From Basidiobolus meristosporus CBS 931.73 (Eukaryota; Fungi; Basidiobolomycota): a stretch of 64,000 nucleotides of DNA. Below, one piece after another: positions 10,512 to 16,357 of this stretch. The DNA is taken from positions 1 through 64,000 of the forward strand of contig MCFE01000068.1 in assembly GCA_002104905.1 (NCBI GenBank). Direction: 5' to 3'. Below the pieces are notes generated by a model. The model had not been told where the DNA came from, did no database searches, and saw nothing but the letters and a program-made list of their open reading frames with translations. Every line of letters begins with the position of its first letter. The first letter of the stretch is position 1. The translations under genes were made by a program, and so were the position numbers.

Positions 10512-11955
10512 ATGAACATAGCCGAGAAAAGTGTATTGATTCTTGGAGGTGGTTGTTTTGGCCTTTCAGCTGCGATTGAATTGAAGAATCGAGGCTGGAG
10601 TGTCACAGTGCTAGATAGACAACCCATTCCGGCGTCCGACGCGGTAAGTTCTTCCTGAACAGATGAGTGAAGGCTGATTTGAGTACTGATAGCTTTTCTT
10701 TTACAAGGCGAGCACGGATATCAACAAAGCTTTTCGACCAGACTACGGTGGCGATGAGATTTACCAAGCATTATGCATCAAGGCCTACGAAAGATGGAAA
10801 CAATGGAACCAGGAAACTCTAGAGGCGTACCAAGAGAAGGTGTTCCACGAGTGTGGTGTGCTGTTTTTGTGCTATGATAAGATGGGTGAATTTGACAAGA
10901 AATCCATTGCTACTCTCCCGGAGGGCTTCACTCACGTCTATAGAACACCTGAAGAAATAGCCGCGGCTTATCCAACGCTTAGTGAGTCTGGGTTCACAGA
11001 AGGCTATCTCAGCAAATATGCAGGCTGGTTGAATAGCAAATTAGGAATCCAATATGCATGTGACAAGGCCAAGAAGATGGGCGTCAGATTTGTGGAGGGC
11101 GAGACCGCCGGCATGTTCAAAGAGTTCCTGCAAGATAAGTTGGGAAATATCAAAGGTATCATCACACTGGATGGTACCGAGCACTGGGCTGACTTGACAA
11201 TTGTTGCTTCCGGCGCGTGGACTCCTAGCATTGTAGATATGAACGGAATGATGCAAGCCACAGGCCATGCTGTGCTTCAGATAAACATTCCCGAGAGCTT
11301 GCGGCCCAGGTATCGACATGAGGTCCTTCCTGTTATGTTCGCAGATACTACACGCAGTGGTCAGTATTCTCATCCTTATAGCTACCAACGATTGATCTTT
11401 CTTACCAAACCTCGTGTAGGCTTCTATAGCTTTCCTATCAACAAAGATGGAAACTTGAAGATTGCTTGTCATGACCAAGGCTATCTCAATTTCCCAAAAA
11501 ACGATAATCGCGACACCCCTATTTCGTACCCACGTACTTTGGCCACTTCTCCCAAAGATACAGTGCCAATAGACGCAGTCCGTAATTTCCGCTCGTTTAT
11601 ACGAAGCACCTATCCCGAGCTGCGCCATCTAAACATTGCCGCCACCCGAATGTGTTGGTATACAGACTCCTGGGACGGTGATTTTTATATTGATCACGTC
11701 CCTGGACGCCCCGGGCTTTTCGTAGCTACCGGTGGTAGCGGACATGGCTACAAATTTTTGCCCGTTCTCGGCGAAGTGATTGCCGATGCCGTTGAGTTAA
11801 AACGTAGTGAAATCACTGAGAAATTCAAATGGAGAGTCCCCACGGCAACACAAAAAAGAGATGGATTACGTTGCGACGGTGGGAATGCAATGTTGGATGA
11901 CCATCCAATGGCCACACAGAAAGAGCTCGAAGGAGACCAACGTTCCAAGCTGTAG
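10512..11955 (+). CDS. FAD-dependent amine oxidase (fructosyl-amino-acid/sarcosine/L-pipecolate oxidase family), peroxisomal (ends SKL); introns 10644..10707 and 11360..11419
   Basis: GGGCFGLS, spliced DAASTDINK, RMCWYTDSWDGDFYIDHVP, TGGSGHGYKFLP; C-terminal PTS1 SKL. Confidence 0.9.
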
Positions 11956-12344: not shown

Positions 12345-14245
12345 ATGAACGATGCTTTCTGTTTCTCTTTGCTCAAGATCGCCACTGCGCAAATAATCCA
12401 ACAGTCCACAGCATTTGAGCGGATTCACGGTTCCACTTGTTCCACTGTAACCGACGTGCTTGCCCGGTACTTGTCCCTTTTGGGGAGTGTCGCGAAAGAG
12501 TATTCTCACAATGCAAATAGAAGTAAAAGTAACGCTTTAGATGTACTTCAAACGCTTGTCGATCTTGGTGTGGACGTGGATGATTTACATCAGTGGTTTG
12601 AGGAAACGATGGAAGCCAAATCAACCAATGCTCCTAAAACACATAACACCCAGTTAACTTTACAGAGTAAGTGCTTACGAAATTTCCCAATGAGTTCCAT
12701 GAAAATTGGACTGACGCGTTCCCATCTACTTCTTTGAAAATGTAATCTAGACCTATACAGCAATAATTGTATGACTGACCCAGAGGATTGGTTAGTGTAT
12801 GAGTACCGGGAGGTTCCAGAAGGTTTGACTTTATCAAATCAAGAGGAAAGCGGAAGTTCGGATATAGGTAACGCCACAGAAATGGTTTCCGATTTATCTA
12901 GCGAATTTCCAGACTAATTCCCTTTCCAAATGTCTCTTTAGACACAGAAGAACGAGAAGATGCACACCTTGTAGGAGCTGGGGGTTCCTCACCAAACTCT
13001 AAGGAAAAGAATTCCCATTTGAACACAGAATTAGACAATCCAGATTCTCCAACGGAGGCCCATCCTATGGAGGTGGAGCCTACCGGATTTGTGAAAAGCT
13101 CAGAGACCAAAAGCTGCAGCAATGAGGCTGATTCCAAGAGGCCCGGAGAGCCAGAAACAGCAACCAACTCAACCTCGGCTACTCGACCTTTGTATATTCC
13201 TAGTCATCTCCCACCACTTCCAGAAATTCTATCCCCACAAGGAACCGAAGAGCCTGTGGACGCCGCACAGGTCCCAGAAATAACTGGCGCGCAAGTGGCT
13301 GTAGTCTCCAATACGAAGAATGATAGTGACTACAATCCATACACTCACATCATCCCGTTCAACGAATCCAAAATTGCCTCCACTTCAGATGTATCGCTAC
13401 TTTCATCCATTTCACAGATTGGTGATCACACCGAAGAATCGTCATCGAGCACACCTACCACCCCGCTCTTCGACGAGATCTTCCAGAAGGCCTTGGGGTC
13501 TGTTTCATCTCCGAACGAAATGAATGGCTCCGAGTCCAAACCAATCCCGTACTCATACCTAGAACGACGCAGAAAACAAAAAATTCCCGGCATATCATCC
13601 ACCATCTCTCCATACGACACGCTCTTCGGTAATATCTCTACACACCCATCGACCGTGGACCAAATCCTCCACCAAGTGGCCGCTCCCGAGGTACTCTATC
13701 AATATGTTTCTCAGCCGGTGCCAATCTTCCCTGCCCCCGAAATGAGCCATTTCAAAATGCTGAACGGACAGAGCTCGTCCATGCCCCCGCAGACTACCGA
13801 GGTGGACTCGACAGCGCCAACCGAAGCGCCGGTCGTTCCATCCACAAGGGCACGCGAGGACTCCATCAAAGAGCCCGTTGCGAAGAAGATCATCAAGACT
13901 TCTGCCAAAGAGAACGCCAACCATACAATACCAGAGTCCCCCCGCCCCGAAGCCACACGAAGATCCTCCACCCCGAAGATCCGGCTCAAGGTGAGCGTCC
14001 CCACACCACCCCCGCCGCCTGCCGAAGAGCCGGCCACGGCCACGGCACCAGCGCCCGTCCCCGAAACAAGAGGACAAAATGAGGAGGTCATAAATTGTAT
14101 ATGTGTAAACCCTCGGCTGGACGATGGCAACTTCATGATTGCTTGTGATCGGTGCCAGGTATGGTTCCACGGATCCTGCGTGGGGGTCAGCGAGGGAGAC
14201 ATAGTAGACACCTGGTTTTGCCAACGGTGTGTTTCGAAGGGATGA
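12345..14245 (+). CDS. TAF3: TAF3-like TFIID subunit: N-terminal bromodomain-associated histone fold plus C-terminal PHD finger; join(12345..12666,12751..12867,12942..14245), 580 aa
   Basis: MNDAFCFSLLKIATAQII...TDVLARYL...DV histone fold; two GT..AG introns restore a continuous frame; PHD CICVNPRLDDGNFMIACDRCQVWFHGSCVG...WFCQRC. Confidence 0.8.
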
Positions 14246-14283
14246 TCTATCTAACTGTGTGTTTCGAAGGGATGATCCATCTA
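14227..14283. repeat. 30-bp tandem duplication spanning the TAF3 stop codon
   Basis: gtgtgtttcgaagggatgatctatcta (14227) and gtgtgtttcgaagggatgatccatcta (14257). Confidence 0.9.

Positions 14284-14498: not shown

Positions 14499-16357
<1,859 letters not shown>

What the first reader, a model, noticed from the sequence alone, without database searches (positions are those of the whole stretch)
12345..14245. Fungal TAF3 with a metazoan-style H3K4me3-reader PHD finger
Seen: three exons join a TAF3-type histone fold to a C-terminal PHD, DDGNFMIACDRCQVWFHGSCVG. It aligns closely with the human TAF3 PHD (DDGSPMIGCDDCDDWYHWPCVG) and keeps the cage Met and Trp. Established: metazoan TAF3 anchors TFIID to H3K4me3 through this PHD, and budding-yeast Taf3 lacks it. 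Inference: direct TFIID-H3K4me3 reading may predate the animal-fungal split and have been lost in Dikarya. A YIPSHLPPLP motif reminiscent of TAF8-C is also present, so TAF3 versus TAF8 identity needs testing.
Basis: partly seen in the sequence, partly recalled or inferred. Interest (0 to 1): 0.7.

Follow-up and report, generated by a model that had tools for sequence, protein, structure and literature searches.

The report
Basidiobolus TAF3 with C-terminal PHD finger
This is a real three-exon gene for the TFIID subunit TAF3 of the early-diverging fungus Basidiobolus meristosporus, carrying a histone-reader-type PHD finger, but TAF3 with a PHD in early fungi and its loss in Dikarya was already published in 2019, so it is an ordinary new member of a known kind.

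Summary
Exons 12345-12666, 12751-12867 and 12942-14245 (+) give a 580-aa protein. It is identical to the annotated hypothetical protein K493DRAFT_298313 of Basidiobolus meristosporus CBS 931.73. [quoted passage not shown]

TAF3 rather than TAF8 is supported:
- There is no TAF8_C domain; only its first nine residues, the IPxxLPxLP motif, are present.
- A profile of the fungal family hits human TAF3 (77 bits) ahead of TAF8 (62 bits).
- The histone fold sits in a well-supported fungal clade. That clade holds PHD-bearing proteins of Mucoromycota, Glomeromycotina, Mortierellomycotina and a chytrid, plus PHD-less Basidiomycota proteins.

The evolutionary inference (a PHD on opisthokont-ancestor TAF3, lost in Dikarya) is already in Antonova et al. 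2019, Genes Dev (PMC6672047).

"Metazoan-style" is only partly right:
- The finger keeps the equivalents of TAF3 D877, M882 and W891.
- All 28 fungal-type fingers lack the W868 cage wall.
- They have a CxC, not CxxC, first zinc knuckle.
- They score closer to BPTF, PHF2 and CFP1 than to TAF3.

H3K4me2/3 reading through a minimal one-Trp cage, as in MLL5, is plausible but untested. No RNA data were available, and no Basidiobolus TAF8 paralogue could be retrieved. Interest is low.

The parts
12345..12666 (+). Exon 1 (residues 1-107 plus 1 nt). It encodes the Bromo_TP histone fold, residues 4-80 = nt 12354-12584.
   Evidence: One search gives the model. One search gives Pfam PF07524 at E 1.6e-13. 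One search shows identity to the annotated P0001.
12667..12750 (+). Intron 1: 84 nt, phase 1, GTAAGT...TAG, with a CTGAC branch-site consensus.
   Evidence: B. ranarum L001 has an intron at the same position and phase (72 nt).
12751..12867 (+). Exon 2 (residues 108-146), holding the conserved YxYxxVPE segment that follows the histone fold.
   Evidence: The alignment to the Benjaminiella orthologue runs through residues 1-131, across the exon 1/2 junction.
12868..12941 (+). Intron 2: 74 nt, phase 1, GTAACG...TAG, with a CTAAT branch site. Retaining it gives an in-frame stop at 12915-12917.
   Evidence: This intron is absent from the B. ranarum gene model, whose ORF is continuous here.
12942..14245 (+). 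Exon 3 (residues 147-580 plus the stop): a Ser/Pro/Glu/Thr-rich linker, the IP motif, the NPYTHIIPF motif and the PHD.
13196..13222 (+). IPSHLPPLP motif (residues 232-240). It equals the first nine positions of the TAF8_C domain and is shared by TAF3-like and TAF8 proteins. The HTY continuation seen in TAF8 is missing.
   Evidence: One search shows the motif in nearly all relatives. One search aligns it to human TAF8 HIPSHFPEFP. One search shows Pfam TAF8_C starting at this motif in P0150. Searches find no TAF8_C hit in P0001.
13334..13360 (+). NPYTHIIPF motif (residues 278-286), a second short conserved linear motif of the fungal TAF3-like family. Its role is unknown.
   Evidence: One search shows the match in Benjaminiella. 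One search finds it in 10 of the fungal rows by strict pattern.
14096..14230 (+). PHD finger (C532-C576, C4HC3) ending 4 residues before the C-terminus. Candidate methyl-lysine pocket residues are D540 (14120-14122), M545 (14135-14137) and W554 (14162-14164). I530/N531 stand where TAF3 has W868.
   Evidence: Pfam PHD, PHD_2, PHD_5. (PDB relatives). (conservation). (TAF3 cage residues from PMC12238850).

Best explanation
The locus is the single-copy TAF3 gene of Basidiobolus meristosporus. The protein most likely enters TFIID through its N-terminal histone fold, which in TAF3, TAF8 and SPT7 pairs with TAF10; this step is inferred from the family. A long disordered Ser/Pro-rich linker carries two short conserved motifs, IPxxLPxLP (inherited from the TAF8-like ancestor) and NPYTHIIPF. 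The C-terminal PHD finger most likely binds the H3 N-terminal tail with K4 di- or trimethylated and so helps tether TFIID to active promoters. That reading would use a reduced pocket of one Trp (W554), one Met (M545) and one Asp (D540), without the second aromatic wall of animal TAF3. It may therefore be weaker, or less me3-selective, as in MLL5.

Shown here: the gene structure, the domain content, membership of the fungal TAF3-like clade, conservation of the pocket residues, and absence of the PHD in the Basidiomycota relatives examined.

Inferred: TAF10 pairing, TFIID incorporation and histone-mark specificity. My confidence is about 0.85 for TAF3 identity and about 0.55 for H3K4me2/3 reading.
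For: - Gene model: it equals the annotated protein.
- Domains: Bromo_TP and PHD by Pfam.
- Exhaustive HMMER with the histone-fold profile: the top ~35 representatives almost all share histone fold, IP motif and extreme C-terminal PHD. They come from Mucorales, Umbelopsis, Endogonales, Mortierellomycotina, Glomeromycotina, Calcarisporiella and the chytrid Rhizophlyctis. One is already named 'TFIID subunit 3' (Apophysomyces).
- Atlas: the nearest cluster has 83 members with Bromo_TP+PHD, mostly Mucoromycota; next come arthropod TAF3 clusters.
- Family profile A5: human TAF3 at 76.7 bits (E 9e-21, residues 1-86 on 1-86) against TAF8 at 62 bits.
- HFD tree: a 98% SH-aLRT split separates the fungal TAF3-like clade from TAF8_C-bearing proteins. 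The AU test does not reject all TAF3-like rows, sea-urchin TAF3 included, forming one clade (p 0.68; the constrained tree is 6.1 lnL better).
- PHD: all eight zinc ligands are invariant, as are D540, M545 and W554. These match TAF3 cage residues D877, M882 and W891 (PMC12238850). All the closest solved relatives are H3K4me readers.
- MLL5 shows that a one-Trp pocket binds H3K4me2/3 at about 16 uM (PMC3793974).
- Synteny and intron 1 are conserved in B. ranarum.
Against: - The single Basidiobolus histone fold scores slightly better against human TAF8 (33.9 bits) than against TAF3 (26.7 bits).
- In the free tree, metazoan TAF3 sits on the TAF8 side of the main split.
- No separate TAF8 (Bromo_TP+TAF8_C) of Basidiobolus could be retrieved. 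The searches were exhausted and the word search returned only plant and algal TAF8s.
- The W868-equivalent cage wall is missing, and the finger resembles BPTF and PHF2 more than TAF3.
- No transcript evidence was available.
- The fold search of the predicted PHD was not significant (pLDDT 73; best hit BPTF at E 0.46).
Confidence: 0.75

Rival explanations
1. The protein is TAF3, but its PHD is not an H3K4me3 reader. With only one aromatic wall it may bind unmodified H3, H3K4me2 and me3 equally and weakly, or a non-histone ligand.
For: I530/N531 replace TAF3 W868, and L539 stands at the BPTF Y17 position. No fungal-type finger has an aromatic residue before the first Cys: 0 of 28. The fold model gave no usable pocket geometry.
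Against: W554, M545 and D540 are invariant across phyla. All top solved relatives are K4me readers. MLL5, with one Trp, one Met and an Asp/His, binds H3K4me2/3.
Confidence: 0.3
2. The fungal and animal TAF3 PHD fingers were acquired independently, as convergent C-terminal fusions of different PHD subtypes. On this view they were not inherited from one opisthokont TAF3.
For: The first knuckle is CxC in 28 of 28 fungal-type fingers and CxxC in both animal ones. The fungal profile scores BPTF 61, PHF2 61 and CFP1 58 bits against TAF3 43 bits. Fungal against sea-urchin PHD aligns only 40 residues at 45% identity and skips the first knuckle. Metazoan TAF3 HFDs do not join the fungal clade in the free tree. 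Antonova et al. concede that the single-origin model rests on domain architecture alone and that no holozoan TAF3 is in their tree.
Against: In both lineages the PHD has the same position at the extreme C-terminus of the same paralogue, which is most parsimoniously one event. The Asp-Met-Trp pocket triad is shared. The AU test allows TAF3 monophyly. Fifty-residue domains carry little phylogenetic signal.
Confidence: 0.25
3. The protein is TAF8, or an undifferentiated TAF3/TAF8-like protein, that happens to carry a PHD.
For: By single-sequence phmmer the best hit is human TAF8 (E 3.5e-7 against 5.9e-5 for TAF3). The IPSHLPPLP motif matches the start of TAF8_C. No Basidiobolus TAF8 was found here.
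Against: There is no TAF8_C by Pfam or by a purpose-built HMM. The family profile prefers TAF3 by about 15 bits. A 98%-supported split separates it from all 28 TAF8_C-bearing rows. The IP motif is common to TAF3-like proteins, and human TAF3 has an IPDYLPP stretch in the same region. The histone fold starts at residue 1 as in TAF3, while in human TAF8 the aligned stretch starts at about residue 35.
Confidence: 0.07
4. The model is a gene-prediction artefact: the histone fold and the PHD belong to two neighbouring genes or transcripts.
For: There are no RNA data. Intron 2 lies in a poorly conserved segment and is absent in B. ranarum.
Against: In B. ranarum a single ORF runs from just after the histone fold to the PHD, with only intron 1. 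The same architecture recurs in at least 28 representative clusters from several fungal phyla and in animals. The splice and branch signals are canonical. The reading frame stays open from the start of exon 3 at 12942, and no ATG occurs in that frame before M187.
Confidence: 0.03

Closest known systems
TAF3 of Mucoromycotina (e.g. Mucor circinelloides), as described by Antonova et al. 2019 (PMC6672047)
   Same: An N-terminal Bromo_TP histone fold plus a C-terminal PHD. It belongs to the same fungal clade. Compared with the Benjaminiella orthologue, PHD identity is 65% and HFD identity 34%. The published reading is also the same: an ancestral PHD, lost in Dikarya.
   Different: A different lineage: Basidiobolus (Zoopagomycota sensu lato) was not sampled in that paper. 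The linker is longer before the IP motif, which starts at residue 232 against about 155-185. It has DDG rather than DYG ahead of the pocket Met.
Human and other metazoan TAF3 (PDB 2K17, 5C13; TFIID structures 7EDX and others)
   Same: The histone fold lies at residues 1-86, and the fungal family profile's best PDB hit is TAF3. The PHD is at the C-terminus. The pocket residues D877, M882 and W891 have equivalents D540, M545 and W554.
   Different: There is no W868 equivalent. The first zinc knuckle is CxC, not CxxC. Identity is only 45% over 40 residues to sea-urchin TAF3. The protein is much shorter (580 against 929 aa). In the free HFD tree animal TAF3 does not join the fungal clade.
Dikarya Taf3 (S. 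cerevisiae Taf3/Taf47; Basidiomycota Bromo_TP proteins P0043 and P0075)
   Same: Orthologous histone fold and IP motif, in the same clade in the tree.
   Different: The Dikarya proteins have no PHD: Pfam finds Bromo_TP only in P0043 and P0075. For yeast this is per Gangloff 2001, cited in PMC6672047.
TAF8
   Same: A Bromo_TP histone fold that pairs with TAF10, and the IPxxLPxFP motif.
   Different: TAF8 continues into ..D.HTY.. and the rest of TAF8_C (PF10406) and has no PHD. This protein lacks TAF8_C and has a PHD.
BPTF, PHF2, PHF8, CFP1, DIDO1 and MLL5 PHD fingers (H3K4me readers with a CxC first knuckle)
   Same: These are the closest solved sequences to the finger: BPTF at E 3e-13 for the single sequence and 5e-16 for the profile. 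They share the CxC knuckle and an FMI.CD.C..W.HG.CVG-type core. MLL5 shares the one-Trp minimal pocket.
   Different: They sit in unrelated host proteins. BPTF has a four-aromatic cage (Y10, Y17, Y23, W32); here only the Trp is aromatic (alignment).

Membership tests
TAF3 (TFIID subunit 3) | N-terminal Bromo_TP-type histone fold | tested here: met
   PF07524 at residues 4-80, E 1.6e-13, 50.8 bits against a cutoff of 24.6.
TAF3 (TFIID subunit 3) | Histone fold closer to TAF3 than to TAF8 or SPT7 | tested here: met
   The fungal family profile A5 scores human TAF3 at 76.7 bits, TAF8 at 62.1 and SPT7 at about 25. A 98% SH-aLRT split separates the clade from all TAF8_C-bearing rows. Caveat: the single sequence slightly prefers human TAF8.
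TAF3 (TFIID subunit 3) | Monophyly of fungal and metazoan TAF3 histone folds | tested here: inconclusive
   The free tree puts the sea-urchin TAF3 group on the TAF8 side, in an unresolved polytomy. The AU test does not reject one TAF3 clade (p 0.68). Only 106 columns were available.
TAF3 (TFIID subunit 3) | C-terminal PHD finger (in lineages outside Dikarya) | tested here: met
   PF00628 at E 4.7e-9. The C4HC3 ligands run from 532 to 576, ending 4 residues before the C-terminus.
TAF3 (TFIID subunit 3) | A distinct TAF8 paralogue in the same genome | tested here: inconclusive
   The word-index search with a 25-sequence TAF8 alignment returned only plant and algal TAF8s. The exhaustive list was cut at 150 rows.
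TAF3 (TFIID subunit 3) | Heterodimer with TAF10 and incorporation into TFIID | not testable with these tools
   This needs co-purification or co-expression.
TAF8 | TAF8_C domain (PF10406) after the histone fold | tested here: not met
   There is no PF10406 hit even at E<=1. An HMM built from 12 TAF8 C-regions also gave no hit. Only the first nine residues (IPSHLPPLP) are present; the control P0150 scores 68 bits.
SPT7 / SUPT7L | Bromodomain plus an internal histone fold in a large SAGA subunit | tested here: not met
   There is no bromodomain. The yeast SPT7 chain scores only E 0.29.
H3K4me3-reading PHD finger | C4HC3 zinc ligands | tested here: met
   All eight ligands are present and invariant in 14 orthologues.
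H3K4me3-reading PHD finger | Conserved Trp wall (TAF3 W891 / BPTF W32) and Met floor (TAF3 M882) | tested here: met
   W554 and M545 are invariant. The cage definition comes from PMC12238850.
H3K4me3-reading PHD finger | Second aromatic wall before the first Cys (TAF3 W868 / BPTF Y10) | tested here: not met
   I530 and N531 stand there. At position -1, the 28 fungal-type fingers have N, R, K, D or E; at -2 they have I, V or T; none is aromatic.
H3K4me3-reading PHD finger | Preferential binding of H3K4me3 peptide | not testable with these tools
   This needs ITC, a pull-down or an array. The predicted model (pLDDT 73) gave no significant structural match.

The most novel reading that the evidence does not exclude
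The PHD finger of fungal TAF3 is a subtype distinct from the animal TAF3 finger. It has a CxC first knuckle, a BPTF/PHF2-like core and a pocket with a single Trp. Either it was fused to TAF3 independently in fungi, or it has diverged to read H3K4 methylation with a different affinity or state preference. If so, coupling of TFIID to H3K4 methylation arose, or was retuned, more than once.
Probability: 0.25. Interest if true: 0.45.

Novelty: new member of a known kind. Interest (0 to 1): 0.2.

Why it matters
It adds Basidiobolus, and from the survey here also Glomeromycotina, Mortierellomycotina, Endogonales, Calcarisporiella and a chytrid, to the lineages in which TAF3 keeps a PHD. This firms up the published picture that the PHD was lost on the way to Dikarya. 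The one point that goes beyond the literature is that all fungal-type TAF3 fingers share a reduced, one-Trp pocket and a CxC knuckle. This means their histone-mark specificity, and their common origin with the animal finger, should be tested rather than assumed. Neither point is surprising to a TFIID specialist.

Tried and rejected
- RNA evidence: the look-up of sequencing runs listed no RNA run.
- Word-index protein searches reached only Basidiobolus and one Mucorales orthologue. With a TAF8 alignment they reached only plant and algal TAF8s. The Basidiobolus TAF8 paralogue was therefore not found.
- Earlier scan notes on this genome hold nothing on TAF8 or TFIID.
- AlphaFold of the PHD gave pLDDT 73, and the Foldseek PDB search gave no significant match; the top rows were BPTF at E 0.46. 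This was uninformative, as expected for a small zinc domain modelled without zinc.
- SPT7 identity was rejected: there is no bromodomain and the match is E 0.29.
- I considered a PHD-domain phylogeny against other reader families but did not run it.

Full report
**1. Observation.** Reading the window and splicing 12345-12666, 12751-12867 and 12942-14245 gives a 1743-nt CDS of 580 codons.
- Both introns are phase 1 with canonical GT..AG ends and CTRAY-like branch sites.
- Retaining intron 2 would meet an in-frame stop at 12915-12917.
- The product is identical, residue for residue, to the annotated hypothetical protein K493DRAFT_298313 of Basidiobolus meristosporus CBS 931.73 (P0001).
- Pfam finds Bromo_TP at residues 4-80 (E 1.6e-13) and PHD, PHD_2 and PHD_5 at residues 532-576 (E 4.7e-9). 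It finds no TAF8_C even at E<=1.

**2. Support for the gene model without RNA.** No RNA run could be listed, so I used comparative evidence.
- The B. ranarum orthologue (P0002) is 67% identical over exon 3 and 74% over the full-length alignment.
- It lies in the same gene order: a DAO-family oxidoreductase upstream and a cap guanine-N2 methyltransferase (Tgs1-like) downstream on the other strand.
- It has intron 1 at exactly the same codon and phase.
- It has no intron 2. There, one uninterrupted exon runs from just after the histone fold to the PHD.
- The Benjaminiella orthologue aligns across the exon 1/2 junction.
- Separate transcripts for fold and finger are therefore very unlikely.

**3. 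Relatives.** An exhaustive HMMER search with a profile of the first 135 residues found 716 proteins at E<=1e-3.
- The top ~35 almost all share three features: an N-terminal fold, an IPxYFPxFP-type motif, and a PHD within 1-11 residues of the C-terminus.
- Their names place them in Mucorales, Umbelopsis, Endogonales (Jimgerdemannia), Mortierellomycotina, Glomeromycotina (Ambispora, Paraglomus, Gigaspora), Calcarisporiella and the chytrid Rhizophlyctis rosea.
- The Apophysomyces member is already named 'transcription initiation factor TFIID subunit 3'.
- Basidiomycota representatives (Tilletiaria, Paramarasmius) have the fold and the IP motif but no PHD.
- Some Mucoromycota carry an extra PHD-less paralogue: Mycotypha P0019 beside P0006, Ambispora P0030 beside P0023, and Rhizopus P0009.
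- The ESM Atlas agrees. The nearest cluster has 83 Bromo_TP+PHD proteins, mostly Mucoromycota, followed by arthropod TAF3 clusters.

**4. TAF3 or TAF8?** The evidence was mixed at first and then settled on TAF3.
- Taken alone, the Basidiobolus fold scores slightly better on human TAF8 (33.9 bits) than on TAF3 (26.7 bits).
- A profile of 25 fungal family members reverses this: human TAF3 76.7 bits (E 9e-21, residues 1-86 on 1-86), TAF8 62 bits, SPT7 about 25 bits.
- A tree of 75 histone folds, classed by their C-terminal content, has a 98% SH-aLRT split. On one side are 44 fungal rows, with or without PHD. On the other are all 28 TAF8_C-bearing rows plus three rows of the sea-urchin TAF3 group (two with a PHD, one without), the latter in an unresolved polytomy.
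- An AU test does not reject a single clade of all TAF3-like rows (p 0.68). The constrained tree is even 6.1 log-likelihood units better than the quick free tree.
In the Heterostelium TAF8 control the domain starts exactly there.
- It aligns to human TAF8 HIPSHFPEFP.
- The motif is common to TAF3-like proteins too. TAF8 proteins continue with D.HTY and about 40 more conserved residues, which neither Pfam nor a purpose-built HMM finds here.
- It is best read as a relic of the TAF8-like ancestor.
- The one gap is that I could not retrieve a separate Basidiobolus TAF8.

**5. The PHD.** All eight zinc ligands are present.
- Across 14 orthologues from four fungal groups, the invariant residues include D540, F544, M545, W554 and W571.
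- The TAF3 methyl-lysine cage is D877, M882, W868 and W891 (PMC12238850).
- In the alignment with sea-urchin TAF3, three cage residues have equivalents: D540, M545 and W554.
- The fourth, W868, corresponds to I530/N531.
- None of the 28 fungal-type fingers has an aromatic residue at either position before the first Cys.
- All 28 have a CxC first knuckle, whereas both animal TAF3 fingers have CxxC.
- In the Protein Data Bank the finger's nearest sequences are BPTF (E 3e-13), PHF2, MLL5, CFP1 and DIDO1. TAF3 comes about 22nd, at 1.4e-7, and aligns only from the DDG segment onward.
- A family profile gives the same order: BPTF 61 bits, TAF3 43 bits.
- Identity to sea-urchin TAF3 is 45% over 40 residues.
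- All these relatives are H3K4me readers, so the class assignment is sound, but 'metazoan-style' is an overstatement.
- MLL5 shows that a pocket with one Trp, one Met and an Asp/His binds H3K4me2 and me3 at about 16 uM (PMC3793974).
- I therefore expect H3K4me2/3 binding, possibly weaker than in animal TAF3. This is inference.
- A structure prediction (pLDDT 73) and a fold search added nothing.

**6. Comparison with the literature.**
- They state that TAF3 arose from a TAF8 duplication in the opisthokont ancestor and acquired a PHD.
[quoted passage not shown] M. circinelloides) and was lost in later-branching fungi, mainly Dikarya.
- They also note that this rests on domain architecture rather than on the gene tree, and that no holozoan TAF3 was in their tree.
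- Basidiobolus and other Zoopagomycota are not mentioned.
- So the locus is a new member of a described kind.
- The only increment here is a wider taxon list, plus the observation that the fungal fingers form their own subtype.

**7. Verdict.** This is a real gene, correctly delimited.
- TAF3 identity is well supported (about 0.85).
- The evolutionary story is already known.
- Interest is low (0.2).
- The most novel reading still open is independent acquisition, or retuned specificity, of the fungal finger (probability about 0.25).

Noticed in passing
window 14223-14283: A 30-bp unit is tandemly duplicated (2.0 copies, 93% match). It spans the last seven codons, the stop codon of the TAF3 gene and the start of its 3' UTR. 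The C-terminal residues after the last zinc ligand differ between B. meristosporus (VSKG) and B. ranarum (APYRT).
   Followed up: partly
window 10840-11955 (+) and 14499-16112 (-); L001 1-772 and 3985-4929: The flanking genes are a DAO-family FAD oxidoreductase and a Tgs1-like RNA cap guanine-N2 methyltransferase with a long Ser/Glu-rich N-terminal half. The same order and orientation are kept in B. ranarum.
   Followed up: partly
window 12868-12941 versus L001: Intron 2 of the B. meristosporus gene has no counterpart in the B. ranarum gene model, where the ORF is continuous. This is either intron gain or loss between two congeners, or a difference in annotation.
   Followed up: partly
window 13334-13360 (residues 278-286): The short motif NP[YF]TH[IVL][IV]P[FY] is conserved between Basidiobolus, several Mucorales and Actinomortierella, about 40-80 residues after the IP motif. 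It has no Pfam family and no known partner.
   Followed up: partly
P0019/P0006 (Mycotypha), P0030/P0023 (Ambispora), P0009 (Rhizopus): Several Mucoromycota and Glomeromycotina carry a second, PHD-less TAF3-like paralogue beside the PHD-bearing one. PHD loss has therefore happened repeatedly, not only on the Dikarya stem.
   Followed up: no
P0028 (Bifiguratus adelaidae, 1331 aa): The TAF3-like histone fold starts at residue 296 of a protein that UniRef names 'EXPERA domain-containing'. This is probably a fused gene model of two neighbouring genes.
   Followed up: no
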